The notes under the pieces: model-generated
The model's input: the letters and a program-made list of their open reading frames with translations, nothing else
Told to the model about the DNA's origin: nothing
Databases searched by the model: none
Made by a program: the position numbers and the translations under genes
Shown: in pieces, positions 32,657 through 55,373 of the stretch
Layout of the letters: the number at the start of each line of letters is the position of its first letter
How positions within the stretch are numbered: position 1 is the stretch's first letter
IMG/VR virus record: IMGVR_UViG_3300030202_003189
Location: 124,001 to 188,000 of that record
Length of the DNA: 64,000 nt
Reading direction: 5' to 3' (one strand)

Positions 32657-35600
32657 ATGGGGGACAATCGAACAATACATTTAGCAACAAAAGAAGGCAC
32701 ACAAAGCGTTAATATAGACCTAGAACAAGATTTTGATTTCCTAGAGGTATTGAGTCTTCGTATAACACAACAAGAGGCTTATAGAATCTTCTGTGCGAAC
32801 TATGGAGTCTTAGTTGGTAAGGTAAAGGCAAACGGAGGTTATCCTATTAAGAACGCAAAACTATCTATTTTTATTCCATTAGACAATGTAGACGCAGGAA
32901 ATTCAGTAATAAGAAATATCTACCCTTTTGAGACACCTACAGACACACTACCATCAGGACAAAGATATAATTTATTACCCAGAGATAAGCAATTAGCGAC
33001 TCCGGCTGATCATACCCCTGTAGGGACGTTCCCATCCAAATATGACATAATGGTTAATGAAACATTATTATATGTTCATGAGAAGTACTATAAGTACACA
33101 ACCACCACCAATGAGAATGGAGATTATATGTTTTTTGGATTACCTATTGGAACCCAAATAGTTCACATGGATGTTGACTTAAGTGATATAGGAAATAATT
33201 CTGTAACACCAGCGGATTTAATGAATTTAGGGTATTCTGAGGCCCTATTTGAATCCGATGCTAAATTTAAGAGATCAAATGACTTAGACCAATTAGCTCA
33301 GATAGTTGGAATAAATAAAACAGTATATATTAGACCTTTTTGGGGTGATGTGGATGAATGTGAATATGGTATAACAAGGGCTGATTTTGATACCGCAAGG
33401 TTTGTTTTCCCTAAGGGTTATCTAATAGGAAGTGTATATACCGATGGACCAGCGGAGGATAATAACTCTTTTGTTCCTAAATCATGTTGGCAAGAAAGTT
33501 CAACCTCAGCTTCATCTGGAGTAGGACTTAGGGGAGGGGTTTCGCGAATCGTTAGAGCCGATAGTCTAAGAACACCAGAGGAGGTTGCTAGTGCTGGAGA
33601 GAAATATGGAAAAGTTGGAGTAGTAGAAGCTTGTAGATTAACATCAGACGGCACAACTGAATATGTTGGTAAATGGAATACAAAACCAGATGGGTCGTTC
33701 ATGATTCCCTTACCCTTAAATTTAGGAAAAAAGATTTGGGATGAAGATTCACAATCTTGGGTAGATAATGAGGATGAAGGGTTTGCCACTTTTGCAGATT
33801 ATAGATTTAAGATCTATTGGGAAGGTCAAGGGGATGGTAGTAATGAACAAAACGTGGAGAATTACTACGATAATACCATCAACACAACCCAGCTCATTTT
33901 AGGATCTGAGGGAGAAGGAGTACTACGTAGTCCAAAGTATTCTCAATCAGGAGAAGAATACGGCGACTCCTACTCTTCAATATCAAACCTTACGGGAAAT
34001 CTTTGGTACGGTACTTTTTATAATAATTCTAATAGAGATAGTGCAAAACTTAATAGAGGAGTATTATTTTTACCAAATCCATATGTTGATTTAGGTACCT
34101 CAGGAAGTGAGGAGGCTAATAGTTATACCTTCTTTGCAGAACCAGATACATTAAATGCTAGTTCAGCACCATTTAATATGAAGGATCAATTCGGTAATCA
34201 ACTAGGAAGATGGTCAAATTACACAAGAATTAGACTAAGTTCCTATTATACGGTTGCACAGTATTTTAATTATGTAAGTGATTATGATGTTGCAGTACCA
34301 GGTAGAAAACCTGAAGGTTGTTTTAGTGAAGGAATACTCGGGGCTTGGTATAATGGACCCGGAGATTCAGTTTACTCCACTCCAAATAAACCAAGTGTAT
34401 ATGATGACAATGGTCCTGATTGGAATACTCAAAGTGTAGGAACTAACCCTTGGATAATTTCAAGAAGTTGGGTTGATTCAGACGAAGAAATAAGACAATT
34501 CCCAGTTAATTATATTTTTAACAAATATAAAAGAAAAGATCCAAGATGGCAAGGAATACACTTAGAAGGTGATGAAGTGTGGTTGAAAAATTATGGAGGG
34601 TTTATATCTAACTACACCACAGCCTCATTAAAAGTCTATGCGGCTTTTAATATGGGGGCGTCGGCTGGGTTTAATGAACAAACAACCTCTAACTCCGCAG
34701 GATGTCATTTGGAACATATAATTGGAAATGGTGGTGGATTTAGAGGTAATCACAGAGCGGCTGCTCAGTATTGTGATACACAAGGAGATTGTTGTAACCC
34801 ACCCCAACTATTATATTGTACAACCAGTGCTTGTGATTGTACTAACGTATGTACTGGAACGTATGCAGGTAGCTCACTATTTTGTCAGGATGGCGATTGT
34901 TTTGGTAAGACGGACGGAACCAACGGAGTTATAGACGGATACTGGTTTACCACTGCTAGGAATTTCTACCATTTTGATATGGATGGGGCTTCAGGGAACG
35001 GAAACGATTTAATTTTTAACACTACAATAGATGAATGGGAATCCACCAATCATTTGGATGGTTGTAAAGGATGTATGGATTTGGATACAGTATATGAAGA
35101 TATGGCGAACTGGTCAATGACAGGAAGAGGAGGGTCTATATTTAACGAGGATGCTACTCCTTATTCGTGGGTTATGCCACCAGGTCAAACCCCATTATAT
35201 GACCCAAACCAAGGGGTTGATATATCGGGAACACTAACATATGGTAATATGAGAGATACTCCATCACCCCTAGCAAAGGGGTCAAATAAAGTTACAATGG
35301 TAGGTGATGGTGTAACTGAGAATACAGGTATTATGGGGAATACTATATGTGGCGGGTTTCTTGCTCCAGTATGGGGACAATACGCTGTCAGAGCACGTAT
35401 ACCTTACGGAGGAGCTGACTCTTGTTTCGCCGGTGTAGTTGGTATACACTATTGTGATACAACGAGAAAAAATTGTGACCTTAACGCCAATTGGAGCTAT
35501 TCTGCGGCGACCTCACAATTTTTTAATACAGGATATGATAAACAATCTGTATCCTTTGCCGGATTCGCAGGTAATGATGATTATACAAGATCACTGGACT

Positions 35601-37183
35601 ACTCATCTAACTATTGTCCAAGTTTTATCACCGGCCAACCAGCCCTAGTGGATAGTCACTGTAGTGCACTAGAGAAAAATGTAAGAGTTTGTGGGGATGG
35701 ACATGATAAGGATTGTGGAGCTCTGGGAGCTTACCACCAAAAAGGGGGTGGAGGATTCGTCAGTTGGGAATTACGTCTAAAGGAAGGTATGGCCGTTAGA
35801 TTAGGGGTACAACCGGTTGCTGCTAATAGTTGGGATAGTATTCCGGCATGGTGTGATCCCGGTATTACTTGTAATCACAATGGAACTACTGATGGTGGGA
35901 ATTTAGCAATCCCATCATTGGCACATGACCAAAATCTCTGTGATAATGGGTTTGGGTGTGGTTATGTCTACCTTAATATGTCGATTAGTCATTATGTGAA
36001 TCCTAGAGAAAGTGAACTCGTAGAGAATTACCAAAGAACAATAGGAGAACCAATACACGGTTCCTTATATTTTCCACAATACTATGTGGGTACTAACGAT
36101 GATGAATGTTGTTCAAGATCCAATGGTGACTTTGAGGGATGGAGTCATAATGCACCAGAAGAAAGACATAAAGTGGATGTATGGGAAAACTTTTCATTAT
36201 TATATGCTGGTAGTTTTATGGAGGTTAATGGGACTCTTAATTTTGAAAATTATACAACAGGACAAGGGGATGTGTTAGGGGGATCACCAGTGAGGAACGG
36301 TAAATATTATAACACTAGAACAATAGGAAATACAGATATTATTGAGATAACTAAAGAGAAACCTAATTTTAGACTGGGGCCAAACCAATGGGCTAGTATA
36401 GACATGAACTTACCTAATACATCAGTTAATTTAAGTTCTGATTATAATTATTCTCTAATATTAGATAAAAGTGATTATGGCCCTTTCTTCACCAATCAAG
36501 ACACTCAAAATTGGCCATTAACATACGGTGGAGGTATGGAAGAACTACAGAATAAGAATTTTGCACCATACGACTGGTTAGATTTTAGATTATCACAACA
36601 ATATCCTCCACAATTTGATACTAATGAGATAATGCAAAACGGTATTGGTGCTCAAGGAGATATTCCAGTTAATTGGGATTGGATGAATGGTGGTAATTGG
36701 GGGGCATCAACCTCCTCATTGGTTTATCCAGTACAATTTCCTTATTATGCTACCGCTGGTAATCTTGTTGAGTCTAACTATAATGTTTTCAGATACGACG
36801 TCCAAGGATTTTCTCAAGGGGGTGTTGTATTTCCTGGGGTATATCCTAGGTGGTACAATTGGTTAAGACCAATGCCAGAGAGTTGGTATTCTACTAATAC
36901 TTTTTGGTGGAAAGACATCTACGCCCTATCAACCGAATATAAAGAGTTAGATGGTGAAACTCCAGGAGCTTATAGTCCAACAACGCCATGGTCAGCAGGT
37001 GAAACTTATAATAATGACTGGGGTACTCAGAAGACACAAGAAGTTGGTAGATCAGGATGGAGTGCAACTAATCTAAATGCTTATCCTATTCGAAAATATT
37101 ATTATTTCGGTCTTAGGAAAAATAGATGGACATCTTTAGATGAATTAAAAGATGTATTAGGAAACGTACAAATGGATTATTAA
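32657..37183 (+). CDS. Large baseplate/tail structural protein with Cys/Trp-rich insertions
   Basis: Globular-looking N-terminus (LEQDFDFLEVLSL, YGV..G.V, KYYKYTT.TN..GDYM.FG.P.G, PFWG, GITRADF) and terminal YYYFGL; Cys-rich centre. Confidence 0.65.
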   Translation: MGDNRTIHLATKEGTQSVNIDLEQDFDFLEVLSLRITQQEAYRIFCANYGVLVGKVKANGGYPIKNAKLSIFIPLDNVDAGNSVIRNIYPFETPTDTLPSGQRYNLLPRDKQLATPADHTPVGTFPSKYDIMVNETLLYVHEKYYKYTTTTNENGDYMFFGLPIGTQIVHMDVDLSDIGNNSVTPADLMNLGYSEALFESDAKFKRSNDLDQLAQIVGINKTVYIRPFWGDVDECEYGITRADFDTARFVFPKGYLIGSVYTDGPAEDNNSFVPKSCWQESSTSASSGVGLRGGVSRIVRADSLRTPEEVASAGEKYGKVGVVEACRLTSDGTTEYVGKWNTKPDGSFMIPLPLNLGKKIWDEDSQSWVDNEDEGFATFADYRFKIYWEGQGDGSNEQNVENYYDNTINTTQLILGSEGEGVLRSPKYSQSGEEYGDSYSSISNLTGNLWYGTFYNNSNRDSAKLNRGVLFLPNPYVDLGTSGSEEANSYTFFAEPDTLNASSAPFNMKDQFGNQLGRWSNYTRIRLSSYYTVAQYFNYVSDYDVAVPGRKPEGCFSEGILGAWYNGPGDSVYSTPNKPSVYDDNGPDWNTQSVGTNPWIISRSWVDSDEEIRQFPVNYIFNKYKRKDPRWQGIHLEGDEVWLKNYGGFISNYTTASLKVYAAFNMGASAGFNEQTTSNSAGCHLEHIIGNGGGFRGNHRAAAQYCDTQGDCCNPPQLLYCTTSACDCTNVCTGTYAGSSLFCQDGDCFGKTDGTNGVIDGYWFTTARNFYHFDMDGASGNGNDLIFNTTIDEWESTNHLDGCKGCMDLDTVYEDMANWSMTGRGGSIFNEDATPYSWVMPPGQTPLYDPNQGVDISGTLTYGNMRDTPSPLAKGSNKVTMVGDGVTENTGIMGNTICGGFLAPVWGQYAVRARIPYGGADSCFAGVVGIHYCDTTRKNCDLNANWSYSAATSQFFNTGYDKQSVSFAGFAGNDDYTRSLDYSSNYCPSFITGQPALVDSHCSALEKNVRVCGDGHDKDCGALGAYHQKGGGGFVSWELRLKEGMAVRLGVQPVAANSWDSIPAWCDPGITCNHNGTTDGGNLAIPSLAHDQNLCDNGFGCGYVYLNMSISHYVNPRESELVENYQRTIGEPIHGSLYFPQYYVGTNDDECCSRSNGDFEGWSHNAPEERHKVDVWENFSLLYAGSFMEVNGTLNFENYTTGQGDVLGGSPVRNGKYYNTRTIGNTDIIEITKEKPNFRLGPNQWASIDMNLPNTSVNLSSDYNYSLILDKSDYGPFFTNQDTQNWPLTYGGGMEELQNKNFAPYDWLDFRLSQQYPPQFDTNEIMQNGIGAQGDIPVNWDWMNGGNWGASTSSLVYPVQFPYYATAGNLVESNYNVFRYDVQGFSQGGVVFPGVYPRWYNWLRPMPESWYSTNTFWWKDIYALSTEYKELDGETPGAYSPTTPWSAGETYNNDWGTQKTQEVGRSGWSATNLNAYPIRKYYYFGLRKNRWTSLDELKDVLGNVQMDY

Positions 37184-40100
37184 TGGAAAGAAAAAAGACA
37201 ATAAGAACACAAGATAAAAGAGCCGGAGCTAAAGGAATAGGCTATAGTGAGACTGTTGGTTTTACTAACACAAATAAACCTTTACCAACGGGAGAGGTTA
37301 TTAAAATAGTTAGTCAATCAGAACAGTTTTTTACTGAAAGAAAAGAATCAAAATTATATCGACTAACCGCTACTCTCACACCATTAGTTTATCTACCACA
37401 ACAATATTATTGGATAGGTGCTAACTTAGCACCAAATGGTGAATTAGCAATCGTAGATTCGACATCACAAACAAGTGTATATGAAACATTAAATTATTCA
37501 TTACCTAATATTCTCACACCATCCTTTGCCGGTGGTAACCCAACAGAATATAATTTTGATTTAGATAATACTAGTAATTGGGTAGGACATATTTTATACC
37601 CTTATGAAAATGAATATCTAAAACTATATACAATACCAGAGTTTACTGCCAGTCTTATGTTTATTCCAGATATTAACGATGCAAGATATGGGATTAATAC
37701 TGGAATAAATGATTTAGTATATTATGATATAGTGAACTATTTAGAGAGTGATTTAGATGGATTAACAATATCAGAATGGTTTAACGGAGTTGACCATATC
37801 TTAGAAGAACCACTATGGGTAGATAATAGTGGGGCGGTTGTACCAGTCACCGATGAAAATGCTACTACACTAACTTTCCCAGAACTAAAAATAAGTAATC
37901 AAGAGTATAAAGGGTACACACAAGATGGAGTTCCTTTTCTTTTTAGTGTTCCGGTAAAAACAGAACAGGGATGGTATACCGCATTATATACACCATTTGA
38001 ACATAATTTCGAGGAAGGTGACTATATCTTTGTTAAACCATTGGTTACAATTGGATATGTAACACTAAACGGTAAATATGACACTTGTGACCCTAGTTTA
38101 TATGGATTTAAGAGAGTAATTGGTGCATCATGGGATGTGGTAGGAGATAAATACTCGAGACACTATGTTATTATTGAACATAAGACTAAAAAACATTGGG
38201 ATTGGGTAACAGCTGGTGGTGGAACAAACACAGCTGGAGAAAACTATACATGGAGCGTTGAAAGCTCACAAGGGTTTATAAAGAAGGTGTCAAACTACTC
38301 ACCAGAACTTATCCAATCAATAAGTGTTGAATTTATAAATCTTTCTCATTTTACTCTAATTCCTACTCAACCAGATACCATTCTGGTTACCCTAGGTGTG
38401 TTAGAAACTGGATTAAGAGTTGATGATAAAGTGTTAATAACCATATCTGAAGATGCTTATGGTACAGAATTTTATGAAGAAAGAAGACCATCGTTATTTA
38501 ATTTAAGTGGAATATATACTGTTGCGAGTATTGAAAGTTTATTCTCTTTTACAATACGTGCAAGAGAAATTCAGGATAATATACCATTTTTTGATCAAAC
38601 TCTAAATCAGTTGGTATTTGGTGGAACAAACTATCGTGTTGAGGTATCAAGGATAGGGTCGACACCATCAGAATATTACCTAAGAAAAGGAAAAATTATA
38701 ACAAGTATTAATAATTTTGAGATTAATAAATTACCTTTTAGTAATAGTATATATAGTGATCCTAATTATAATGTTGTTGTAGATGAGGATATTGATATCT
38801 CTAAAATAAAAGATAACTACGGAAAACCAATCTCTGAGTTATTCTTAATGTTAACTAAGAGAGCGGGGCAGAAAACATACGATTTTACTGATGTAGAATG
38901 TTTCTTTTCTTGGATGTTTAACTACTCCTCTATATTAGTAAAAACAGGTGATGGGTTAGATATAGTATCAAAAAGAAGTGCTGATAGTAAACTTAGTGGA
39001 CATGTAAAGAACGTAAGCGGTGGTTTTATGAGTGAATATAATGATTATTTAGGTGATTGGTATTATATGGATTTTGTGGAATATAACAATACTCAACTCA
39101 CTGAAACTAGAATAGAGAGATTAAAAAATAGATTTAATACAATAGGACGGGAATGTCCAGATAATAAATGTGATGAAGTTTTAATTGACGGATCAAATGG
39201 ATTTGAGATAAATATATGGGACGTTTACAATAGTTACAATGTGGGGAGTCTAACTTTAACAGATGGGGGTTCTAGTATTGGAGGAATACTAAGCTCAAGT
39301 AGTGCAGGTCTCGGACAATCACAACCAGCAGATGGTAATTACATATATACTACAGTTTTTATCACTCCAGAATTATGTAATTTACCAGATGAGGGGTTAT
39401 TATTGGAATTTGATTTTACACAGGTCACAACCACAGGGGTGGTTAGAATCCTAGGACCATCTGGGAATGAAGAGACTTTAGGGAATGGTTCTTCGGCTCT
39501 GTTTGTTGGAACTGCCGCTGATGTAAATGGAGTTGCTCAAACAATAAACTACTCACTAACATTCAACCCAGCCACTTCTGGAGTTTATAGAATATTATTA
39601 GGTATAGTTAATTTTGAAGGAAGTTATGATGCTAATACGGGGGGTACGTTTTCTCCACCATATGAGGCTTACTTCAATAATGTTACCTTAATGAGGTATT
39701 TTGGTACACCAAAATATGGTGGATGGGTATACGATCCTCTTGCGGATTACCAGATAAAAAGATGGTCAAGTTATATAGAAACTGCTGACCCTTCAGTTCT
39801 AGGTATTCCTTATTGGGCTCAAGATGTGGATGGACTAATGGTTTGGAGAGAATTACTAGATATTGGTTATTTTGAAGATGTGGAACAGACCTTAGGGGTA
39901 GATTACCCTTTCCTAAACGGAAAACACTATATTAATATAGATAAAACAATTGCTGTGGGTATAACACCGTCCAAACTTGGAGAAAATAGTTCTTCTTACT
40001 CTACTGTAATATATGGATGTATGGATGATGTGGCTGCCAATTATAACCCTTTTGCAACATATCCTTGTGCCAGTAATATAGTGCAAGGCGGACCATGTGT

Positions 40101-42382: not shown

Positions 42383-43285
42383 ATGAGTGATATACAAAAA
42401 TATAAATTAAGAAGTACAGGGAAAAAACGTAATGTTAATATACAGATTGAACAAGACTTTTTCCCAGTTGACAATACCGAAGAGGTAAAAGAGAGAATAG
42501 ATAAAATAACCCAACTAGAAATTAATCCTATTGATGATTGGGAAAAAACAAAATATACTTTAAGATGTGATGAAGGGTCAAATATTGGGGATAACTTAAA
42601 CGAACAGGCTGGGTGTTACACTATTCAGATGCATATGTGGAACAATTGTGATGGTTCTGGTTGTATTCCGTCTATGACAACAAGTTGGACAGAATCTGGA
42701 ATATTTAGTAAACAAGATGTTGCTTATAGATCTGCTCGGTTTATAGGAAGTTATGTTAGATTATCTTATTTCACAACACCACATCGAGAAACTCAGAAAT
42801 TAGTATCATATGCTAATATACAATTATCAGAAAATGATAATTCCTTTATTAATCTTTGTAAGTCAGAACAGGGTTCGTTCTTATATCATTGGAAATCTGA
42901 GGCGAAATTAAATATGACAGATAGTAGACTCTATATGAAGGTAGAGTTTTTTAATTCAGCGAAGGGAGTCGTTCACACATTAGGTAGGACTTTTCCTGTC
43001 GATAGTAATGATGGTAATTTTTATATTGATTATTGGAATGAAAAATTTGATTATGTCACGGTGTTATTGGATCCGGCTACCCGAACTTATAGGTTTGAAA
43101 CAAGTTGGGTTGACCTAGATCTCATAGCATGGTGGAACCAATACATAATATCACAAGGTGCAGGTGATCCACTACCTAGACTTAAAAATTATTTAGTTGA
43201 AAATACTTATAATAATGGGTGTGAAATGGATCTATGGGATAAAAGATTAAATAACTTACCAATCTGGCCAGGAATAGAATATTAA
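42383..43285 (+). CDS. Hypothetical virion structural protein
   Basis: 300 aa; INPI.D.EK, S...L.YF.TP...QKL, LYMK.EFFN...G; within baseplate cluster. Confidence 0.55.
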   Translation: MSDIQKYKLRSTGKKRNVNIQIEQDFFPVDNTEEVKERIDKITQLEINPIDDWEKTKYTLRCDEGSNIGDNLNEQAGCYTIQMHMWNNCDGSGCIPSMTTSWTESGIFSKQDVAYRSARFIGSYVRLSYFTTPHRETQKLVSYANIQLSENDNSFINLCKSEQGSFLYHWKSEAKLNMTDSRLYMKVEFFNSAKGVVHTLGRTFPVDSNDGNFYIDYWNEKFDYVTVLLDPATRTYRFETSWVDLDLIAWWNQYIISQGAGDPLPRLKNYLVENTYNNGCEMDLWDKRLNNLPIWPGIEY

Positions 43286-43287
43286 AA

Positions 43288-47650: not shown

Positions 47651-48619
47651 ATGAATAAAAATAAAAAAATAGGATGTTTAGATATAACAGCATTAAATTA
47701 TGATGAAACTGTAGGGGTTGCTTGTGATAGATGTTGCATAAAACCAGAACAGGACAATATCATAAAGGAAGTTCTCAATTTTATGTTATTTGGTAAAAGA
47801 GACCCGAATAAACCGATAGATTATTCAACATACGCTGTGTCAAAACTAGACAATGAACCACTCTTTAACCTACCTTCCCAAGCAAGAGAATATGGGTTAC
47901 AAATAGGGTGTTTAGGTTTTCATGAACATATTATGAGGGGAAAAAAATTATATATGGCGTGTTCTTCTCATGAAGACGCTCTATCAGAAGATAGAGTTGA
48001 ACCAACAGCCGAAGACTATGTTGAAAGTATAACAACAGAAGGGGTTGTACAGTGGTATAGATCTACAACAATTGAACAACAAGTAAAATTCTGTGAAGAA
48101 AAAATAAGTGAGGGTTATAGATGGAATCGTATAGATAGAATATGTAGTATGCCAAACAGGGATAATACAAACATAGGGAATCATCAGATAGTCGGATACG
48201 TAGATAATATACCTGTATGGTATACAAAAGGAGCCGCCATGGAATATGCCAATGTAATAAAATGTGATGGATATTACTCCTATAATATGAATGGTACACT
48301 TGGATATATTGCTTGTGAGAATTATGATATTGTAAAAGAGAAACTACTAGGTGTAGAATGTAAAGGAACCAGAAAGATGTTAGACGGGACCTTAGCATTT
48401 GTTCAATTAGGTCAAATAAACGCAACTAAATATGGTGAGGCTTGTTGTCTAGAACAAGCACACCAAGGATATTTATGGAATGGAAGAGGATGTGTTAAAA
48501 ATCAAATGGAACTAACATGGTCATGTATTGATAATTTAACAACAGAAATCTATGATGGTACCGGTGAATATAAAACATTTGACGAATGTCTAATGTTCTG
48601 TGAAAAAAATAAAAAATAA
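47651..48619 (+). CDS. Cys-rich protein with GCxD repeat and two DUF3721-like modules
   Basis: GCLDITALNY; A.EY...IGC.G.H.H...G...YMAC and a degenerate second copy. Confidence 0.55.
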   Translation: MNKNKKIGCLDITALNYDETVGVACDRCCIKPEQDNIIKEVLNFMLFGKRDPNKPIDYSTYAVSKLDNEPLFNLPSQAREYGLQIGCLGFHEHIMRGKKLYMACSSHEDALSEDRVEPTAEDYVESITTEGVVQWYRSTTIEQQVKFCEEKISEGYRWNRIDRICSMPNRDNTNIGNHQIVGYVDNIPVWYTKGAAMEYANVIKCDGYYSYNMNGTLGYIACENYDIVKEKLLGVECKGTRKMLDGTLAFVQLGQINATKYGEACCLEQAHQGYLWNGRGCVKNQMELTWSCIDNLTTEIYDGTGEYKTFDECLMFCEKNKK

Positions 48620-48624: not shown

Positions 48625-50217
48625 ATGGCACAACCAGGATGTATTGATGAATTATGTTTAAGTTTTGACTTTGCTTCTTATCCGTATAGTGGCCCAATTA
48701 ACTCGTATTTCTTTGAGTCTATTGACACTAATGTGGCTAATGTTTGGGGACTACCAACTCCGGTAATCGGAGCGTTTAATCCGTTCAGTTTAGGGGCAAA
48801 TATTTTGATCGGTAGTAGTGACGCTGGTATGACGTCAACCACTACCGGACTAAGTACCTCTTACGAATTATTTTACTTCCAAGGAGGTAATTTCTTATCA
48901 GTTCCATTGGCAACTCCAATTCTTATACCAAGTACCTATGTTGTTAGAGTCACTTCTACATCTGAAATCGCAGATGATGGGTCGGCTTGTATTTATGATT
49001 TTTCTTTCGCAATAAATAATAATTATGATTTTATTCCTTTTGTGATGGCTGGTTCCACAGGAGCGAATGGTTGGTGTAATGCCTGGGGATGTACTGAAGC
49101 ATCATCACCTAATTATATTCCAGGGGCTAATGCAAATGACGGTTCTTGTGTCTATAATATGGATGCTGATCCTTATGGTTGTACCGATAATAATGCTTGT
49201 AATTACGATTTCTTAAAAACTATTGACGACGGAAGTTGTAATTATGATTGTTATGGATGTACAGACCCTAACGCTGGTAATTGGAACACTTCAGCAACAA
49301 TTCCATGTAATGGACTCTATAATTTTTGTGTAAATATGGGGGTTTCCAACTGTTGTTGTGATTATAACCAACAAACATTTGGGTGTACAGATTTTTTAGC
49401 AGATAACTACGATTCATCAGCTTCATTTGACGATGGAAGTTGTACCTTCACAACTGAAGGATGTACGGATCCTAGGGCAGATAATTATAACCCTATTTAT
49501 ACAACTGATGATGGAACTTGTAGTATTGGTGGGTGTATGGATAACACAGCTTCTAATTGGAATCAGGAAGCCACGTTTGACAATGGTTCCTGTGTGTATG
49601 ATAACTGTAAATATGGTTGTACGGACCCAACATCGTCTAATTATGATATTTACGCAACTTGTGATGACGGTTCTTGTATGGGTGGATGTTGTGGAAAAAC
49701 AAACTCAGGTAATTTTATAATTACAGGTACTACAGAAAGTAAATTAAACAGAATTAAGTGGCTTGGGACCGCTATAGGGGTCGACTCAAGTGGTGCGGTT
49801 CAAGACAATGTAAATATTGCGATGACTGATGCAAACATGACGGCAAAATACGGTGTTAATCAATGGTATCCTTTAGTTAGAAGAGTCCCATCTTTAGGAA
49901 TGAAGAATGGATGGACACAAATAACTCCTGGAGTTGTTACTGCATACACCATTGATAATATACATTATTGGGATTATGAGATAGGAAAACAATCAATGTT
50001 CGCAGTAGAGATGAAAAATTGTTGTCCAGGATGTCTTTATCCAGATATAAAAGAAGAGTGGACAATGGGACATGTTTTCCCTCCACAAATAGAAAATAAT
50101 GTATTTATAGATAGAGGAATTGCTTCCGTTTTTGAAGAACATTATAGATTAACAGAAGTTAAGACTTTGGAGGATTTTGATATTTACCAATCAGGATTTT
50201 TCAATATAATAAATTAA
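48625..50217 (+). CDS. Structural protein with tandem GCTD...DDGSC repeats
   Basis: Seven repeats, then ITGTTESKL ... KEE...G.V.PP.I.NNVFIDRG..SVFE.H.RL.EV.TL C-terminal domain. Confidence 0.65.
   Translation: MAQPGCIDELCLSFDFASYPYSGPINSYFFESIDTNVANVWGLPTPVIGAFNPFSLGANILIGSSDAGMTSTTTGLSTSYELFYFQGGNFLSVPLATPILIPSTYVVRVTSTSEIADDGSACIYDFSFAINNNYDFIPFVMAGSTGANGWCNAWGCTEASSPNYIPGANANDGSCVYNMDADPYGCTDNNACNYDFLKTIDDGSCNYDCYGCTDPNAGNWNTSATIPCNGLYNFCVNMGVSNCCCDYNQQTFGCTDFLADNYDSSASFDDGSCTFTTEGCTDPRADNYNPIYTTDDGTCSIGGCMDNTASNWNQEATFDNGSCVYDNCKYGCTDPTSSNYDIYATCDDGSCMGGCCGKTNSGNFIITGTTESKLNRIKWLGTAIGVDSSGAVQDNVNIAMTDANMTAKYGVNQWYPLVRRVPSLGMKNGWTQITPGVVTAYTIDNIHYWDYEIGKQSMFAVEMKNCCPGCLYPDIKEEWTMGHVFPPQIENNVFIDRGIASVFEEHYRLTEVKTLEDFDIYQSGFFNIIN
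49087..49677 (+). repeat. Seven tandem GC(T/M)(D/E)xxAxN(Y/W)xxxAxxDDGSC-type coding repeats
   Basis: GCTEASSPNY, GCTDNNACNY, GCTDPNAGNW, GCTDFLADNY, GCTDPRADNY, GCMDNTASNW, GCTDPTSSNY read directly from the translation. Confidence 0.9.
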
Positions 50218-50235: not shown

Positions 50236-51126
50236 ATGGCAACAGGTAATTATGGAATAAAAAGACCGGCAGATGTATCACCACAGGATGTGGATATGTA
50301 CGTACACTACTCACCAAGTAGGGACTCAAACTTTACTAATAGTTTCGTAAAAGTAAGTGCCCCTGAATTTTTAACGAGTTATAATAAGCCATCGTCGGGA
50401 GGAGCACTAGGAGGGGTGTTAGAAGGTTTGTATAATTTAACCCTTTCCCCAACAATATTCAATGCTAGGGGTATCTATACCATTGTTTTGAAACCAAGAG
50501 AAATTATTAAAACAATAGTTGATTGTGGTAATCTAGCGGCACTTCCAGAGGTAAAAGGTATTGTCCTTGACAACTCCAATCTTACTTCTGAAGCAGTAAA
50601 TGGAGGGTTAGTGGGATATAGAATTGAATACTATGACCAAAATACTAACTCTAAAATAAGAAATTTATTTAGGATAGTTACATCCTCAAATTTAGCAGAG
50701 CCAGTTAATCAACAATTATCTAATACAACTCAGAAGGCAATAAGGTATAGTTTTAACGATGGAGGAAATCTCATATTTTTAACCTTAACCCCAAGTTCTG
50801 CACCTAATGTTAAACCAAACGCAGAACCTTTTTTAGGACAAACAGGACAGGTGATCGCAATCTCCAATACATTCTTTAATCCAGTAACGATAGAGATAGA
50901 ACTAACAGAACATGATTTTGATACTTTAGGAACCGGTATATTTGGTAACCAAACAAAATCAATCCAAGACGGAATATACACAATTTATGATTCAAGTAAC
51001 GCTATTTATAAACAATATAACTTATTTGAAATTAAAGACACATTTAATGAATCTCTATATGAAGTTAGAGAAGAACGTACAAATGTCGATACCAGTAAAA
51101 CTTTTAATAGTATAACCTCGTTATAA
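50236..51126 (+). CDS. Putative baseplate structural protein
   Basis: 296 aa, MATGNYGIKRPADV, GLYNL.L, GYRIEY, NTFFNP, NQTKSI.DGIYTIYD; overlaps the next gene (TAATG). Confidence 0.6.
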   Translation: MATGNYGIKRPADVSPQDVDMYVHYSPSRDSNFTNSFVKVSAPEFLTSYNKPSSGGALGGVLEGLYNLTLSPTIFNARGIYTIVLKPREIIKTIVDCGNLAALPEVKGIVLDNSNLTSEAVNGGLVGYRIEYYDQNTNSKIRNLFRIVTSSNLAEPVNQQLSNTTQKAIRYSFNDGGNLIFLTLTPSSAPNVKPNAEPFLGQTGQVIAISNTFFNPVTIEIELTEHDFDTLGTGIFGNQTKSIQDGIYTIYDSSNAIYKQYNLFEIKDTFNESLYEVREERTNVDTSKTFNSITSL

Positions 51127-54100
51127 TGGCATATAAAAGAGTAATAGGTAATTATCAATCTAACGCGGACTTTTCACCGAGTTTAGTGGGATATCAAATA
51201 TCAGAAGGTAGCATAACGATATTTAACACTTTTTATACTACAGCTAATCTGGAGTCTAGAAGTAATATTTTCTACGAAACACAGGGATTTTCTCAAGCAA
51301 TATCATTGAGTAATTTAGGTATTACGTCCACCCAAGGACAATCACTTCTTGATAACAACCTAAATTTAGTCTTAAATCTAGATCAAAACGACCTATTTAA
51401 TTATACTTTATTTGGTAGTCTAAGAGAACACATAAAGTCAAGTATTACTAGTATAATAAGGAAGTGGCCAGCTTCCCTATACGTCAATAAGATAGTTAGT
51501 GGGGCGACTTTGAATACAATTCTGGAATATGACTACAGTCCAATAACAAATCGATCAAAATTCAAAGTTCCCGCATCAACGATAAGGAATAATTTTGATA
51601 TTAATTTAGAGAACTCACCTAATCCATATCAAGGATATAATGGGATTAGAATGATGGGGTTAGACTATTATAAATATGTTATAAAATTTCCGGTAACTGG
51701 AAGTACAATAGGTAATAGTCCAGGATATGCAAATAATGTACAAGAATTACCAATAATCGGGTATACTGGCACATCAAACCTTTCACAAAACTATGTGTAT
51801 TTTAATGTTAAAGGAAATCCTTTCACAGGTACTACTTCTTCACCTAGTGGAGGAATAATGTCTGCAAATTTCCACATAAAACCAAATAAACAAATAGTCG
51901 AAGAATTTTTTTCTAAATTAAAAAATTTAGACAGTTTCTTATTAAATAGAGAGACAACACCTATTTTTACATCAAAATTTACAGTTCCTATGGAGGGTAA
52001 TGGAGGTGGATTTATAGAGACACCTAGAAAATACACTTGGCCAACCACAGATGGGTATAATATAGATATTAACACCACAAAGTATCAAACATACCTTATA
52101 GGATTATTAGAGTTGTCCGATTCTTACGACAATTATAAAACAGATCTAGTTTCTAGGTTTTTTACAACAGAAGCAATAAAAGAATTTGACACATCTGATA
52201 ATAGAGTACAAAAATTATTAAGAATATACGGTCGTGAATTTGATGAAGTTAAAAGATATATAGATGGATTGGCTTTCGCTAATCGTGTTAGTTATAATAA
52301 GAGTAATAATATACCGGATCAATTAGTTAAGAACTTTGCGAGAACATTAGGGTTTGAGACTATTGATTTTAATGATCAGAGTAATCTACTAGAATCTTTT
52401 TTTGGAGGAACAAACAACCCTATTTTTTCAGGGACTTCAGTAAGTATGACACCAGTGGAATTTGATATTGAGTTATGGAGACGATTGATTATAAACGCTG
52501 GTTATTTATTTAGGGCAAAAGGGACACGAAAAATCATAGAATTTTTCTTAAAATTTATTGGTGCACCGGAATCCCTGGTTGAGTTTAATGAATATGTTTA
52601 CACTACGAGAGGTAAACTTGATACAGACATGGTTAACCAGTCTATTCACTACTTGACTAATTCTCTTGATCAGGCAGCAGTTTCAGTGGACATACCAATG
52701 GACGCAGAAGGATATCCTCGAGTACTTTCTCATGATGACAACTACTACTTTCAAATGAAGGGTGGATGGTATCGGGAAACTAACACCATTGGTGCTAACT
52801 CACCACATAGAGGTCCTTATGATGGGGGTCAAGAGTATTTTGATAAATTTAGGTGTTTTACAGATATCTCTGGGGCTTCGATTACCACCAGAACCGTACC
52901 AACAGGAACCATACCAGAAGAAGATTTAACAATAGTTTTAGTTTCTAATGAATTAGGACTAGAGAATAATTTTAATTATATAAAAAATTCTTTAGGGGCC
53001 GGTGTAGGGTTAGGTTATACAAATAGTACTGGAGGAGGAGGTATAGGAAAAGGTAACACACCAGGGGCTTGTGATCCTAATAATCCAGCATTATTTTGTA
53101 CATGGACTAATGTAAATGAAGCTGTACAATTTGGTGGTGGTGCGGTATATGTTTTTGAACACGTTGGGGAAGAAATTCCTGCAAATATGCAACAATTAGC
53201 AAAAGATTTATATGATGCAGGATACGCCGTACTCACAATAAGTGACTATTCCCAACCTTCATTATATCCTATAACATCTGTGAGTGATCATATAATAGGT
53301 GAACCTTGGGGTTTTATTGAGAATCCTTTTATTGACGCATTAAATCCTTTAGGTCAAAGTTGGGGAGTTTCCCCATCAATGAGTACCGCACAAGGATGGA
53401 ACATTACCGGAACCAAACCAGAGGCACAGACACTAGCGTATAATGCACCACCAAACGAGACAATTATAAACACAGTATATCTACACAATACCAACCAAGG
53501 AAGATGGGTACATTCACAAAATCCTAACTTATGGCAAGGAGGAGTGGGGTCACAGCAATTGTTCACTAATATAATGAACTTCTTAACAATGAGAACCGAA
53601 GAATACCGACAATATTTTAATTTTGAATGGAATGACTTCTACGAACAAGAAATATATGTCTCCTGTCCTGGTTTCTCTTTAACACCACAGGTTGATAATA
53701 AAAAATCTTGGTCTGTGAAAGATGGGATCGACACAATTAGAGATTGGAGTATTAGTGATAGTAATACAGCAACTACTAATACAATTCGAGATACCTATTA
53801 CGCTGTTGGGGATAGTGAAAAATTAGTATTGAACACCAAGATGGTAGATGCTCATATTAATGTGGCAAAGGGGATAGAATATGATGTTTACAAATACAAT
53901 AAGGATTACGGATTTCCAATATCACAGAATTTTGAATATTATTCACAAAATTATGCACCAACAATGGGTGACCCAGCAACACCGGGTACTGATAGGTATA
54001 TGGAAAATAATCTATGGCCAGTTTATAGTTATAGAACGAATCCTTTCATGGCTAGTTCTACTGATCCATTAAACCCATTTAGTTATTATTATGGTTCACA

Positions 54101-55373
54101 ATTAAGCGCCGCTTCTTTTACAGTTAGTGCTACAACATTTGCTCAGTATATTGATAACCTTAAGACCACCTTTATAAACGTTAAAAATAGAAAGACGATA
54201 GGTGGAGGGGGATTTGGATTCCAACCAAATTGGCCAGCATATCCAACATTAAGGAATTTATACGAATCTTATGTGAGTGGAGGAACACATTCAACATCAA
54301 CCGGAGTTGTAACTTATCCATTTAGTAGTAATCAATTAGATTATGAAAATATGATAGGATTTATGAGTAAAATAGAACCATACTGGACGCCATTAGTAGA
54401 GCAATTTATACCTTCTACTACTATAATAGGTCTAGGAACAAAATATAGTAATACAGTCTTTGATAAACAGAAATATGTTTATAGACATGGACAACATAGT
54501 ACAATGGAAATAGAAGATATTTCTAACAGCACAATGTTAACAAACCCTTTTCCTGCTTATGATACCCCAGATACGTTAAATAATAACACGGGTAGTCAAT
54601 GGTATAATAAAACAGTAGTATATTCACGAATAATTGGACCAGGTGATGCCGCAACAGAAACAGAACCATTAATATTAGTACAAACTGATGGCACCAATAC
54701 AGTTGGTGGGGTTTCAACCCCAGTTAGTGCCTTAGTTGCGGGGGGGTCTTTTAGTCTTAGAATAGGGGTTAAATTTATTTCTGGGTTACAAAATATACCA
54801 GGTTCTTTAGGGGGACAAAAAACATATAATGTTGGTGGATCAATAGGATGTGCCAATAATAGTGTTCCATTTGGACCACCTACGAATTGTTTTGATTTTA
54901 TTGCGGGTGTTGGAATTCCAGAAAGACAAGGAAAAATATTCATAAAAGATGCCATAACTGCAGGTGAGGATTTAGAAATATTAGTTAGAGGACCAGGGTT
55001 TTATGAAGTCGATTGGTCTCCTAGTGTTGGGTGTACAACCGATTTCAAAATATCTACTAATATAAATGGATTAATATTGGATAGTGTTAAACTTTATAGA
55101 AGCACTGGTGCCGTATCAACTGCATATATAGTTGATATTGAAAATCGTAATGGGGCCTTTACTATGGGAATGGAATATGACCAAGACGCTCAATTAGATT
55201 GTAATAGAATGATGCATTGGAGAGGATTATCTGGAAGTGCACCACCAGCAGGAGGTACTGCTAAATGGGGACTTTCACCAGGACATGGTAATGTTTGGCC
55301 TGGCACTGATGGAACAGAATCTGTTACTGAAATAGATTGGTATGAAAGAGGATTAATAGACGACGTAGTTTAG
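51126..55373 (+). CDS. Baseplate wedge protein (T4 gp7 / P2 gpI-like core) with insertions
   Basis: IYGREFDE.K.YID, NIPD.L.KN.A..LG, ELWRRLI.N..YLF.AKGTRK.IEF.L, LVEQFIP.TT. Confidence 0.7.
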   Translation: MAYKRVIGNYQSNADFSPSLVGYQISEGSITIFNTFYTTANLESRSNIFYETQGFSQAISLSNLGITSTQGQSLLDNNLNLVLNLDQNDLFNYTLFGSLREHIKSSITSIIRKWPASLYVNKIVSGATLNTILEYDYSPITNRSKFKVPASTIRNNFDINLENSPNPYQGYNGIRMMGLDYYKYVIKFPVTGSTIGNSPGYANNVQELPIIGYTGTSNLSQNYVYFNVKGNPFTGTTSSPSGGIMSANFHIKPNKQIVEEFFSKLKNLDSFLLNRETTPIFTSKFTVPMEGNGGGFIETPRKYTWPTTDGYNIDINTTKYQTYLIGLLELSDSYDNYKTDLVSRFFTTEAIKEFDTSDNRVQKLLRIYGREFDEVKRYIDGLAFANRVSYNKSNNIPDQLVKNFARTLGFETIDFNDQSNLLESFFGGTNNPIFSGTSVSMTPVEFDIELWRRLIINAGYLFRAKGTRKIIEFFLKFIGAPESLVEFNEYVYTTRGKLDTDMVNQSIHYLTNSLDQAAVSVDIPMDAEGYPRVLSHDDNYYFQMKGGWYRETNTIGANSPHRGPYDGGQEYFDKFRCFTDISGASITTRTVPTGTIPEEDLTIVLVSNELGLENNFNYIKNSLGAGVGLGYTNSTGGGGIGKGNTPGACDPNNPALFCTWTNVNEAVQFGGGAVYVFEHVGEEIPANMQQLAKDLYDAGYAVLTISDYSQPSLYPITSVSDHIIGEPWGFIENPFIDALNPLGQSWGVSPSMSTAQGWNITGTKPEAQTLAYNAPPNETIINTVYLHNTNQGRWVHSQNPNLWQGGVGSQQLFTNIMNFLTMRTEEYRQYFNFEWNDFYEQEIYVSCPGFSLTPQVDNKKSWSVKDGIDTIRDWSISDSNTATTNTIRDTYYAVGDSEKLVLNTKMVDAHINVAKGIEYDVYKYNKDYGFPISQNFEYYSQNYAPTMGDPATPGTDRYMENNLWPVYSYRTNPFMASSTDPLNPFSYYYGSQLSAASFTVSATTFAQYIDNLKTTFINVKNRKTIGGGGFGFQPNWPAYPTLRNLYESYVSGGTHSTSTGVVTYPFSSNQLDYENMIGFMSKIEPYWTPLVEQFIPSTTIIGLGTKYSNTVFDKQKYVYRHGQHSTMEIEDISNSTMLTNPFPAYDTPDTLNNNTGSQWYNKTVVYSRIIGPGDAATETEPLILVQTDGTNTVGGVSTPVSALVAGGSFSLRIGVKFISGLQNIPGSLGGQKTYNVGGSIGCANNSVPFGPPTNCFDFIAGVGIPERQGKIFIKDAITAGEDLEILVRGPGFYEVDWSPSVGCTTDFKISTNINGLILDSVKLYRSTGAVSTAYIVDIENRNGAFTMGMEYDQDAQLDCNRMMHWRGLSGSAPPAGGTAKWGLSPGHGNVWPGTDGTESVTEIDWYERGLIDDVV

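What the first reader, a model, noticed from the sequence alone, without database searches (positions are those of the whole stretch)
32657..55373. Baseplate gigantism: scaffold proteins inflated with Cys/Trp/Gly-rich insertions
Seen: six tail/baseplate ORFs of 1370-2746 aa in this window, each with short globular-looking blocks separated by long Cys-rich tracts (e.g. YCDTQGDCCNPPQLLYCTTSACDCTNVC, ~34770-34860). Known: cytoplasm-assembled phage virion proteins are usually Cys-poor. Inference: a heavily decorated, disulfide- or metal-stapled baseplate that may need post-lysis oxidation or a phage-encoded oxidase.
Basis: partly seen in the sequence, partly recalled or inferred. Interest (0 to 1): 0.6.

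Follow-up and report, generated by a model that had tools for sequence, protein, structure and literature searches.

The report
Cysteine-repeat modules on a phage baseplate
A marine jumbo phage that most likely infects Bacteroidota has doubled the size of its outer baseplate/fibre gene block, partly by adding small two-cysteine repeat modules that its hosts use on secreted surface proteins; this is a new variant of known modular tail proteins, and the disulfide idea is untested.

Summary
The six giant ORFs and the quoted peptide are real, but "each has long Cys-rich tracts" is overstated. Their Cys content is 0.6-3.5%, against 1.5% genome-wide. Only the 1508-aa and 1370-aa proteins have strong Cys clusters; the 1730- and 2746-aa proteins have weaker regional skews. 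The richest proteins are two smaller ORFs of 322 aa (5.3%) and 530 aa (5.8%).

The genes lie in a tight operon downstream of gp25- and gp6-like wedge genes of a myovirus. The record is 231 kb and about 70% complete.

Comparison with about 60 related contigs shows that much of the large size is shared:
- The 1508- and 1424-aa proteins have same-size orthologues.
- A marine subclade expanded further. The 1730-aa protein matches 595-aa orthologues plus two insertions and a 770-aa tail. The 530-aa protein matches 290-aa orthologues. The 1370- and 322-aa genes are extra.

The 530-aa protein carries six copies of a roughly 25-aa repeat with two invariant Cys. The repeat has no Pfam or NCBIfam model. 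It occurs in more than 5000 proteins, many of them T9SS-sorted Bacteroidota surface proteins, and in other phages' giant virion proteins.

No Erv or DsbA gene was found; a thioredoxin and a glutaredoxin are present. Disulfide stapling after lysis is plausible and has a precedent in cyanophage Pam3, but it is unproven.

The parts
30397..30777 (+). gp25/W-like sheath-initiator wedge protein (126 aa), anchor of the module
   Evidence: PF04965 GPW_gp25, E 2.3e-14. Orthologues found in all related loci.
30780..32588 (+). gp6/J-like baseplate wedge protein (602 aa, 0.7% Cys)
   Evidence: PF04865 Baseplate_J, E 3.4e-6, and phrog_6/219 baseplate wedge. It is 26-29% identical to the wedge proteins of Microcystis phage Mel-JY01 and Flavobacterium phage immuto. 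60 related IMG/VR loci were found.
32657..37183 (+). 1508-aa protein in the gp7 position. N-terminal ~390 aa is conserved clade-wide and contains a transthyretin/CarboxypepD_reg-like sandwich. The remainder is variable.
   Evidence: Orthologues are 1231-1543 aa with 1.7-2.6% Cys. Only aa 1-~390 align, at 37-40% identity. The AF2 model is poor (pLDDT 54), but aa 50-250 match carboxypeptidase D domain II at Z 9.1, rmsd 1.9 over 79 aa. No Pfam, PHROG or PDB hit. hhalign to T4 gp7 was negative.
34703..36112 (+). Cys-clustered middle region of the 1508-aa protein (aa 683-1152, 26 of its 31 Cys). Includes the quoted tract at nt 34769-34852.
   Evidence: The tract is present in L005 and deleted in L006. 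Cys columns appear and disappear in matched sets across 10 orthologues. C803/C806, C933/C940 and C1151/C1152 are invariant. Homologues exist only in 9 marine clusters.
37183..42375 (+). 1730-aa protein: an expanded orthologue of a ~595-aa baseplate-module protein. Conserved blocks are aa 25-69, 491-659 and 843-918. The C-terminal extension is aa 919-1730 (nt 39937-42372).
   Evidence: hmmsearch with a profile of 17 compact orthologues gave E 8.6e-42 in three colinear blocks. 19 of 25 Cys lie in the extension. L005 has a 1697-aa orthologue at 72% identity.
42383..43285 (+). 300-aa protein (2.0% Cys), counterpart of the ~284-aa protein of compact relatives
   Evidence: BLASTP 24-25% identity, E down to 8e-10, in the syntenic position. 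44% identical to the L079 counterpart.
43288..43521 (+). 77-aa small ORF, conserved in position (78 aa in L074)
43525..47637 (+). 1370-aa Cys-rich protein (48 Cys, 3.5%). An extra gene with no counterpart in the compact relatives. The C-terminal aa 1009-1370 (nt 46549-47634) is densely Cys-rich with degenerate copies of the repeat.
   Evidence: No hit in the 52%-identity relatives. Only 17 clusters in 5.8 billion proteins, all 1094-1384 aa and marine. Many Cys are invariant in three divergent homologues. Weak paralogy to the 530-aa repeats. The Atlas lead to galactose-binding-like/CBM folds scored 0.8 and is a lead only.
47651..48619 (+). 322-aa Cys-rich protein (17 Cys, 15 invariant). An extra gene whose N-terminus is a degenerate Cys repeat.
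   Evidence: In L079 it is fused to the 530-aa homologue in one 1057-aa ORF.
48625..50217 (+). 530-aa protein (31 Cys, 5.8%). It has an N-terminal beta-sandwich, six ~25-aa two-Cys repeats (aa 156-351, nt 49090-49677), and a C-terminal ~170 aa homologous to ~290-aa Cys-free baseplate-module proteins of relatives.
   Evidence: Alignment A1. Repeat units listed. AF2 pLDDT is 75-88 over aa 80-350. No solved fold matched. 5281 homologues of the repeat region were found.
50236..51126 (+). 296-aa conserved baseplate-module protein (0.3% Cys)
   Evidence: 51-55% identical to ~307-aa proteins of all compact relatives.
51126..55373 (+). 1415-aa fibre-like protein (0.6% Cys). N-terminal ~590 aa is conserved and the C-terminus is variable.
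   Evidence: Orthologous open frames are 800-1100 aa, aligned at 41-45% identity over query aa 4-596; one search places the alignment in G001 at aa 67-594. C-terminal pieces match a second fibre gene of the relatives.
55386..55706 (+). 106-aa small ORF, conserved in L072-L074 and L079
7632..11906 (+). 1424-aa protein downstream of the tube/hub genes (1.2% Cys, no clustering).
   Evidence: Orthologues of 1323-1455 aa with two conserved blocks. Shuffle p 0.20.
12231..20471 (+). 2746-aa protein (1.5% Cys, 23 of 42 after aa 2047).
   Evidence: Orthologues of 1830-2120 aa with three conserved blocks..

Best explanation
WHAT IT IS. The block 32657-55373 encodes the peripheral baseplate and fibre (host-recognition) apparatus of an uncultured marine jumbo myovirus that most likely infects Bacteroidota.

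HOW IT IS BUILT. The proteins are modular. Short conserved blocks, mostly N-terminal, dock them to the gp25/gp6 wedge core. Long lineage-specific distal parts are built from beta-sandwich/CBM-like domains and small cysteine-rich modules.
- Large size is the baseline of the whole phage clade.
- A marine subclade roughly doubled the block, from about 12.2 kb in the one compact relative measured (G001) to 22.7 kb here. It did so by internal insertions, a C-terminal extension, replacement of an N-terminus, and two extra genes.
- One module type is a ~25-aa tandem repeat, roughly C-T-D-P-x-A-x-N-Y-x-P-x-A-x-x-D-D-G-S-C, with two invariant Cys at the ends of a 20-residue unit. The same repeat is abundant in T9SS-secreted surface proteins of Flavobacteriales and relatives, and in other phages' giant virion proteins.

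HOW IT PROBABLY WORKS (inferred, not shown). The proteins are made and assembled reduced in the cytoplasm. The Cys pairs close into disulfides when virions reach oxic seawater. This would turn the modules into rigid, protease- and shear-resistant stalk or adhesion elements that extend and diversify host or particle binding. No dedicated phage oxidase is required, and none was seen.
For: SHOWN.
- Tail context and synteny.
- Tight operon with overlapping or 3-30-nt junctions.
- Expansion mapped against compact orthologues.
- The expanded layout is conserved in Tara Oceans contigs L072-L074 and in L079.
- The 322- and 530-aa proteins are fused in L079, which ties the extra Cys-rich gene to a protein whose C-terminal domain is a conserved baseplate-module protein.
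- The repeat was defined and is found in 5281 proteins. Of the 120 listed, 31 carry T9SS sorting domains, and the named ones are Flavobacteriales, Crocinitomicaceae and Saprospiraceae.
- A paralogous repeat protein of the same phage has a signal peptide and a Por_Secre_tail domain.
- The repeat occurs in 432 or more IMG/VR stretches. These include 2794-2896-aa proteins matching phrog_14478 'virion structural protein', E 1e-110 to 1e-120.
- Cys are conserved, and they are gained and lost in matched sets among orthologues.
- The repeat is modelled with little secondary structure yet pLDDT 75-88, as expected of a small cross-linked knot.
- Core tail proteins are Cys-poor at 0.40%.

PRECEDENT. Cyanophage Pam3 has disulfide-linked wedge and fibres that dithiothreitol releases (PMC9942802).

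BACKGROUND. T9SS cargo carries a Sec signal peptide and crosses the periplasm before translocation (PMC12618676 abstract). From that I infer that the repeat normally works outside the cytoplasm.
Against: - There is no direct evidence that any of these ORFs is in the virion. None matches Pfam, PHROG or PDB.
- The 1508-aa N-terminus shows no similarity to T4 gp7.
- Total Cys counts are often odd (31, 25, 17, 31), so not all Cys can be paired within a chain.
- Matched gain and loss of Cys columns largely follows the subclade tree and could reflect shared ancestry.
- CxxC and vicinal CC motifs would suit metal sites as well.
- The genome record is ~70% complete, so the absence of an oxidase is not established.
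- The host assignment is indirect. It rests on the T9SS domain, repeat homologues, a bS21 gene, and distant similarity to a Flavobacterium phage.
Confidence: 0.55

Rival explanations
1. The clustered cysteines are metal ligands (Zn or Fe sites) that staple the distal modules. Such sites can form in the reducing cytoplasm and need no oxidation step.
For: - The 1508 family has an invariant CxxC (C803/C806), Cx6C (C933/C940) and vicinal CC.
- The 530 family has a CCPGC motif.
- Odd total Cys counts.
- The genome encodes reductants (a thioredoxin and a glutaredoxin-like protein) and no oxidase was seen.
- Metal ions are known in T4 fibre proteins (general knowledge).
Against: - The commonest module has exactly two Cys per ~25-aa unit, too few for a Cys4 site per unit.
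- The same module lives on T9SS-exported extracellular proteins. On general knowledge, disulfides are the usual cross-link in such proteins.
- Few His residues accompany the Cys in the repeat consensus.
Confidence: 0.2
2. The extra Cys-rich genes (1370 aa, 322 aa, perhaps 530 aa) are not virion parts. They would be non-structural late proteins embedded in the operon, such as assembly factors or proteins acting on the host envelope.
For: - No family, PHROG or structural match.
- The genes are absent from the compact relatives, which evidently build a working baseplate without them.
- The phage also encodes clearly non-virion repeat proteins, namely a T9SS cargo with a signal peptide.
Against: - The three window proteins have no signal peptide and no T9SS domain.
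- The C-terminal domain of the 530-aa protein is homologous to a protein conserved in every relative's baseplate block.
- The 322- and 530-aa proteins are fused in L079.
- The repeats occur in other phages' proteins that match a virion-structural PHROG.
- Gene order and tight coupling are conserved in four marine contigs.
Confidence: 0.13
3. Nothing special is present. These would be ordinary large, fast-evolving tail-fibre/adhesin proteins whose Cys content is compositional noise of beta-rich extracellular-type domains, with no stapling role.
For: - Four of the six giant ORFs are at or near the genome-wide Cys level, and two show no clustering.
- Giant size is shared by the clade.
- The N/T/S/G/Y-rich, K-poor composition is typical of fibres.
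Against: - Clustering is far beyond chance in the 1508- and 1370-aa proteins.
- Cys are invariant across 34-44%-identical homologues.
- Both Cys of the repeat are invariant or nearly invariant across the 33 aligned repeat-region sequences, drawn from more than 5000 homologues.
- The block has 4-5 times the Cys of the core tail proteins and of T4, immuto and Mel-JY01 baseplate proteins.
Confidence: 0.1

Closest known systems
T4-type peripheral baseplate (gp7, gp8, gp9, gp10, gp11, gp12) downstream of gp25/gp6
   Same: - Gene position directly after gp25- and gp6-like genes.
- A first protein of more than 1000 aa, followed by several proteins of ~300-600 aa, then fibres.
- Conserved docking parts with a variable periphery.
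   Different: - No sequence or profile similarity to T4 gp7 or gp8, or to any PDB chain.
- About four times the Cys content of T4's set.
- Proteins up to 1730 aa, plus two extra genes.
Disulfide-linked baseplate of cyanophage Pam3 (PMC9942802)
   Same: An aquatic myophage whose wedge and fibres are held by disulfides despite cytoplasmic assembly. Reduction releases the fibres. This shows that a redox-dependent baseplate is possible.
   Different: - Pam3 is a minimal baseplate of six proteins, with a few specific inter-subunit Cys on the wedge proteins.
- Here the gp6-like wedge protein is Cys-poor. The Cys sit in large distal modules and tandem repeats.
- No experimental evidence exists for this phage.
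Cell-surface adhesin-like proteins of Bacteroidota secreted by the T9SS (signal peptide, repeats, Por_Secre_tail/CHU_C domain)
   Same: They share the ~25-aa two-Cys repeat at 41-56% identity over ~200 aa. The phage itself encodes one such cargo protein.
   Different: The window's proteins have no signal peptide and no sorting domain. They are made in the cytoplasm and sit in a baseplate operon.
Ig-like, FN3 and carbohydrate-binding decorations on phage structural proteins (general knowledge: accessory adhesion domains on tail and capsid proteins)
   Same: Accessory, lineage-variable modules are grafted onto conserved structural proteins. They are probably used for weak adhesion or reach.
   Different: The module here is a much smaller cysteine-dependent repeat without a Pfam or NCBIfam model or a solved structure. 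The extent of inflation, about 10 kb, is unusual.
bS21-encoding jumbo phages predicted to infect Bacteroidetes (PMC9723584)
   Same: - Genome size class of ~330 kb.
- A bS21 gene on the reverse strand.
- A Bacteroidota host signal.
   Different: - Those clades were described from freshwater lakes, whereas this subclade is in Tara Oceans marine samples.
- Their tail modules were not analysed.
- Relative G001 shows no bS21 in its 306 kb.

Membership tests
T4 gp7 / TssG-like wedge protein (for the 1508-aa ORF) | The gene lies immediately downstream of the gp6/J/TssF-like wedge gene | tested here: met
   ORF 32657-37183 follows the gp6-like ORF 30780-32588, as it does in all relatives.
T4 gp7 / TssG-like wedge protein (for the 1508-aa ORF) | Detectable sequence or profile similarity to gp7 | tested here: not met
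   hhalign of the 20-sequence N-terminal profile against T4 gp7 gave probability 0.3%. A profile search of PDB sequences found nothing. No Pfam or PHROG hit.
T4 gp7 / TssG-like wedge protein (for the 1508-aa ORF) | Core-bundle helix and trifurcation-unit fold | tested here: inconclusive
   AF2 model pLDDT 54. Only a transthyretin-like sandwich could be recognised, Z 9.1.
T9SS cargo protein (for the 530-, 1370- and 322-aa ORFs) | N-terminal Sec signal peptide | tested here: not met
   The N-termini are hydrophilic. This contrasts with the paralogue G000:33021-36809, which starts with a classic signal peptide (by inspection, no predictor run).
T9SS cargo protein (for the 530-, 1370- and 322-aa ORFs) | C-terminal sorting domain (PF18962/TIGR04183 or PF13585) | tested here: not met
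   No hit in Pfam or NCBIfam for the window ORFs. The same scans did detect the domain in G000:33021-36809.
Two-Cys ~25-aa repeat (unnamed; consensus G-C-T-D-P-x-A-x-N-Y-x-P-x-A-x-x-D-D-G-S-C) | Two invariant Cys at the ends of a 20-residue unit, with the conserved N-Y and D-D-G-S motifs | tested here: met
   Six units in ORF 48625-50217. Invariant G, C and N columns in alignment A5.
Two-Cys ~25-aa repeat (unnamed; consensus G-C-T-D-P-x-A-x-N-Y-x-P-x-A-x-x-D-D-G-S-C) | Tandem arrays with significant HMMER similarity to other carriers | tested here: met
   5281 proteins at E <= 1e-3, best non-orthologous hits at 1e-60 to 1e-125. 432 or more IMG/VR stretches.
Two-Cys ~25-aa repeat (unnamed; consensus G-C-T-D-P-x-A-x-N-Y-x-P-x-A-x-x-D-D-G-S-C) | Intra-unit disulfide | not testable with these tools
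Disulfide-linked baseplate (Pam3 type) | Cys-rich loops on the wedge proteins that bond to fibre Cys, and sensitivity to reductant | not testable with these tools
   The gp6-like wedge protein has only 4 Cys, 0.7%. No virions are available.
bS21 jumbo phages of Bacteroidetes | bS21 gene on the reverse strand within the terminase/capsid/portal block | tested here: inconclusive
   PF01165 match of 45 bits at G000:214878-215018 on the minus strand. The neighbouring genes were not annotated here, and no phylogeny was made.

The most novel reading that the evidence does not exclude
The ~25-aa two-Cys repeat is an undescribed, disulfide-locked mini-domain shared between T9SS-exported surface adhesins of marine Bacteroidota and the virions of their phages.
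- On this reading, phages have repeatedly grafted the host's own extracellular module onto baseplate and fibre proteins. They also secrete T9SS cargo that carries it.
- Parts of the virion would then mature only by oxidation after lysis.
- That would make adsorption competence redox-dependent in the ocean.
Probability: 0.3. Interest if true: 0.65.

Novelty: new variant of a known kind. Interest (0 to 1): 0.45.

Why it matters
- **An uncharacterised, abundant module.** The repeat occurs in thousands of marine Bacteroidota surface proteins and hundreds of viral contigs. It has no Pfam or NCBIfam model and no matching solved structure.
- **A concrete case of baseplate growth.** Conserved docking blocks persist while insertions, extensions and extra genes accumulate. 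This can be traced gene by gene between a compact and an expanded subclade.
- **A possible maturation step outside the cell.** If the Cys modules are oxidised only after release, virion function would depend on the redox state of the water. That bears on phage decay and host range in oxic versus low-oxygen layers.
- **A host signal.** The shared module also points to the host of an uncultured jumbo-phage group.

Tried and rejected
- **Family scans.** Pfam, PHROG and NCBIfam scans of all ORFs in 32657-55373 found nothing above threshold. A sub-threshold DUF3721 hit on the 322-aa ORF (16.6 bits against a cut-off of 27) was ignored.
- **PDB sequence searches.** phmmer with the four giant ORFs and hmmsearch with two family profiles gave no meaningful match.
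- **Cultured phage records.** tblastn and megablast found nothing for the 1508-aa ORF or the 20-kb block. Profiles of four module families against the immuto and Mel-JY01 downstream proteins also found nothing.
- **T4 comparison.** hhalign against T4 gp7 and gp8 was negative.
- **Structure models.**
  - The 1508-aa N-terminus gave pLDDT 54.
  - The 530-aa protein gave pLDDT 61, with the conserved C-terminal domain unmodelled.
  - Foldseek against PDB gave no hit at E <= 0.001.
  - ESM Atlas shape hits had TM 0.19-0.25 only.
  - Atlas feature searches scored 0.8 for the 1370-aa protein (a lead only), with nothing usable for the 1730-aa extension.
- **Complex prediction.** The 322- plus 530-aa pair gave no verdict (score 0.02). 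This is no evidence either way.
- **Other causes of inflation.** No DNA tandem repeats of note in the block, no reverse transcriptase or DGR signal, and no paralogy among the six giant ORFs. Recent duplication and diversity-generating retroelements are therefore not supported.
- **Literature.** A full-text search for the motif string found nothing relevant.
- **Not used.** No reads tools were used, no alternative genetic code was needed, and the large representative-protein search was not run.

Full report
**1. Where the window lies**

The window is bases 124001-188000 of a 231,285-bp IMG/VR virus record that CheckV rates about 70% complete. That implies a jumbo phage of roughly 330 kb.

PHROG and Pfam scans identify these tail genes:
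- the end of a tail sheath gene (3-974);
- a tail tube (1831-2319);
- a T4_baseplate/hub-like protein (2432-3190);
- a gp25-like sheath initiator (30397-30777);
- a gp6/J-like wedge protein (30780-32588).

A replication block interrupts the tail genes at 23291-29958. It encodes SSB, a UvsX-like recombinase, an exonuclease, a DnaB helicase and a ribonucleotide reductase. All genes of the finding lie on the + strand, with overlapping or 3-30-nt junctions. That arrangement suggests one late operon.

**2. Check of the observation**

Six ORFs of 1424, 2746, 1508, 1730, 1370 and 1415 aa exist. Only four lie inside the stated coordinates. The quoted peptide is aa 705-732 of ORF 32657-37183.

| ORF (aa) | Cys % | Cys clustering |
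|---|---|---|
| 1424 | 1.2 | none (shuffle p 0.20) |
| 2746 | 1.5 | 23 of 42 after aa 2047 (5e-5) |
| 1508 | 2.1 | 26 of 31 in aa 683-1152 (2e-9) |
| 1730 | 1.4 | 19 of 25 in the C-terminal extension (0.003) |
| 1370 | 3.5 | 44 of 48 in two regions (5e-15) |
| 1415 | 0.6 | none (shuffle p 0.91) |
| 322 (not among the six) | 5.3 | not clustered (shuffle p 0.94) |
| 530 (not among the six) | 5.8 | weak (shuffle p 0.07) |

The genome-wide value is 1.5%.

The block as a whole has 2.21% Cys. For comparison:
- this phage's core tail proteins have 0.40%;
- T4's baseplate set has 0.57%;
- the corresponding proteins of Flavobacterium phage immuto and Microcystis phage Mel-JY01 have 0-0.8%, with one exception at 2.2%.

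It is concentrated in a few proteins and regions, not in 'each' giant ORF.

**3. Comparison with relatives**

The wedge protein retrieved 60 IMG/VR loci. Most are 51-55% identical and share a compact layout: gp25, gp6, about 1230-1540 aa, about 595 aa, about 284, about 290, about 307, then a fibre of 800-1100 aa.

| This phage | Compact relatives | What differs |
|---|---|---|
| 1508 aa | 1231-1543 aa, 1.7-2.6% Cys | Same size; only the N-terminal ~390 aa align |
| 1424 aa | 1323-1455 aa | Same size |
| 2746 aa | 1830-2120 aa | Somewhat larger here |
| 1730 aa | ~595 aa | Three colinear blocks, about +215 aa and +158 aa internally, about +770 aa at the C-terminus |
| 530 aa | ~290 aa, Cys-free | Keeps the C-terminal ~170 aa; gains a beta-sandwich and six Cys repeats |
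| 1370 and 322 aa | none | Extra genes |
| 1415 aa | 800-1100 aa | N-terminal ~590 aa conserved |

Gigantism is therefore a clade trait. The same expanded layout recurs in Tara Oceans contigs L072-L074 and in L079. The block is 22.7 kb here and about 12.2 kb in the one compact relative measured, G001.

The quoted Cys tract is itself an indel. It is present in a 66%-identical orthologue and deleted in a 39%-identical one.

**4. The cysteine modules**

ORF 48625-50217 carries six units of a ~25-aa repeat. Each unit has two Cys at the ends of a 20-residue stretch, with N-Y and D-D-G-S motifs between them.

Where else the repeat occurs:
- Three other proteins of this genome carry 4-11 units. One of them, G000:33021-36809, has a classic signal peptide and a T9SS C-terminal sorting domain (PF18962, E 8e-12; TIGR04183).
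- A word-seeded HMMER search found 5281 proteins with the repeat. Of the 120 listed, 31 carry T9SS sorting domains, and the named ones are Flavobacteriales, Crocinitomicaceae and Saprospiraceae.
- The repeat is also in at least 432 IMG/VR stretches.
  - About 60% of the 78 carrier ORFs I could delimit begin with signal peptides.
  - Others are giant proteins without one. These include 2794-2896-aa proteins that match phrog_14478 'virion structural protein' at E 1e-110 to 1e-120.

No Pfam or NCBIfam model covers the repeat, and no solved structure matched the model. A full-text search for the motif string found nothing. AlphaFold models the array with little secondary structure but pLDDT 75-88. 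I read this as consistent with a small cross-linked knot.

Cysteine conservation in the other families:
- The 1370-aa family has 17 clusters, all marine and all of similar length. Most of its Cys are invariant in the three divergent homologues I aligned.
- The 322-aa family also keeps most Cys invariant.
- In the 1508-aa family, Cys columns appear and vanish in matched sets: 683/721, 728/743, 987/1002, 1012/1020 and 1095/1101. C803/C806, C933/C940 and C1151/C1152 never vary.

This pattern is what paired cross-links or shared metal sites would give. It also tracks the subclade tree, so it is suggestive only.

**5. Are they virion parts?**

There is no direct evidence. The indirect evidence is:
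- position and tight coupling within a baseplate operon;
- homology of the 530-aa C-terminal domain to a protein present in every relative's block;
- fusion of the 322- and 530-aa proteins into one 1057-aa ORF in L079;
- use of the same repeat in another lineage's PHROG-annotated virion proteins;
- absence of signal peptides and sorting domains in the window's proteins.

The 1508-aa protein occupies the gp7 position but shows no profile similarity to T4 gp7. Its recognisable N-terminal domain is a common transthyretin-like sandwich. I do not file it as a gp7 family member.

**6. Redox genes**

The 231 kb held contain one thioredoxin (101 bits) and one glutaredoxin-like gene (28.8 bits). On general knowledge both usually serve as reductants, for example with ribonucleotide reductase. 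No Erv1/ALR, DsbA or Thioredoxin_4 match was found. About 30% of the genome is missing, so absence is not shown.

**7. Mechanism**

The best-supported reading is a modular peripheral baseplate/fibre complex. Conserved docking blocks carry lineage-specific distal modules, and some of those modules are of the type used on the host's extracellular proteins.

By analogy with T9SS cargo, I infer that the two-Cys units are disulfide-closed. [quoted passage not shown] Cyanophage Pam3 provides a precedent: its wedge-fibre disulfides are needed for fibre attachment (PMC9942802). For cytoplasm-made virion proteins, oxidation would most simply happen after lysis in oxic seawater.

The rivals are metal sites (CxxC, CC and odd Cys counts), a non-structural role for the extra genes, and no special role at all. 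I weigh them at about 0.2, 0.13 and 0.1.

**8. Comparison with what is known, and novelty**

Already known:
- modular, fast-evolving tail fibres;
- accessory adhesion domains on phage structural proteins (general knowledge);
- a disulfide-dependent baseplate (Pam3, PMC9942802).

New here:
- the specific module, an unmodelled and very abundant two-Cys repeat shared by Bacteroidota T9SS cargo and phage virion-type proteins;
- the traceable doubling of a baseplate block within one phage clade.

I rate it a new variant of a known kind, of moderate interest. The redox-maturation idea is the part that would raise interest if shown.

**9. Host and clade**

Several signals point to Bacteroidota:
- the T9SS-sorted paralogue;
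- the repeat's homologues;
- distant wedge similarity to Flavobacterium phage immuto;
- a bS21 gene on the reverse strand.

The last resembles the bS21 jumbo phages predicted to infect Bacteroidetes (PMC9723584). Those were freshwater, whereas this subclade is in Tara Oceans marine samples.

**10. Limits**

- Both structure models were weak outside the repeat region.
- The complex prediction gave no verdict.
- No reads tools were used, so nothing can be said about expression.
- No alternative genetic code was invoked.

Noticed in passing
G000:C1:33021-36809 (outside the window; locus L067:3021-6809): The phage encodes a 1262-aa protein with a Sec-type signal peptide, the Cys repeats and a T9SS C-terminal sorting domain (PF18962, E 8e-12; TIGR04183). 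The same N-terminal sequence family recurs in many IMG/VR contigs (for example L087, L097, L113, L144). This suggests phage-borne T9SS cargo genes are common.
   Followed up: partly
G000:C1:214836-215030, minus strand (outside the window): A ribosomal protein bS21 gene (PF01165, 45 bits) on the reverse strand, as in the bS21 jumbo phages of Bacteroidetes (PMC9723584). No match was found in the 306 kb of relative G001.
   Followed up: partly
window 3-974 and G000:C1:118654-124974: Two adjacent tail-sheath paralogues of 938 and 1160 aa, 50-55% identical. Window ORF 3-974 is the end of the second.
   Followed up: no
window 23291-29958: A replication/nucleotide block (SSB, UvsX-like recombinase, exonuclease, DnaB helicase, ribonucleotide reductase) sits between the tube/hub/giant-protein genes and the gp25/gp6 wedge genes. 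The arrangement is conserved in relatives.
   Followed up: partly
window 22041-22778 (and paralogues at window 22781-23134 and G000:21328-21933): A 245-aa protein ending in a Peptidase_S74 'chaperone of endosialidase' domain (26 bits, above cut-off), with paralogues. It is probably a self-cleaving fibre or spike protein.
   Followed up: no
L093:759-9449 and L146:624-9008 (IMG/VR contigs of other phages): Giant 2896- and 2794-aa proteins matching phrog_14478 'virion structural protein' (E 1e-110 to 1e-120) carry 4-6 copies of the same two-Cys repeat.
   Followed up: partly
L079:6030-9203 (IMGVR_UViG_3300006921_004083): A single 1057-aa ORF fuses homologues of the window's 322-aa protein (aa 1-319) and 530-aa protein (aa 498-1056).
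   Followed up: yes
window 5023-7626: An 867-aa Cys-free, Gly- and Lys-rich protein between the hub-like gene and the 1424-aa ORF. It is conserved in G001 (822 aa). It is a tape-measure candidate by position and composition only.
   Followed up: no
Homologous-protein hits P0001, P0006, P0008, P0029 and others: Precomputed Pfam labels list PF05479 (PsaN, photosystem I subunit N) on many repeat-bearing Bacteroidota proteins. This probably reflects a spurious match of that model to the Cys repeat.
   Followed up: no
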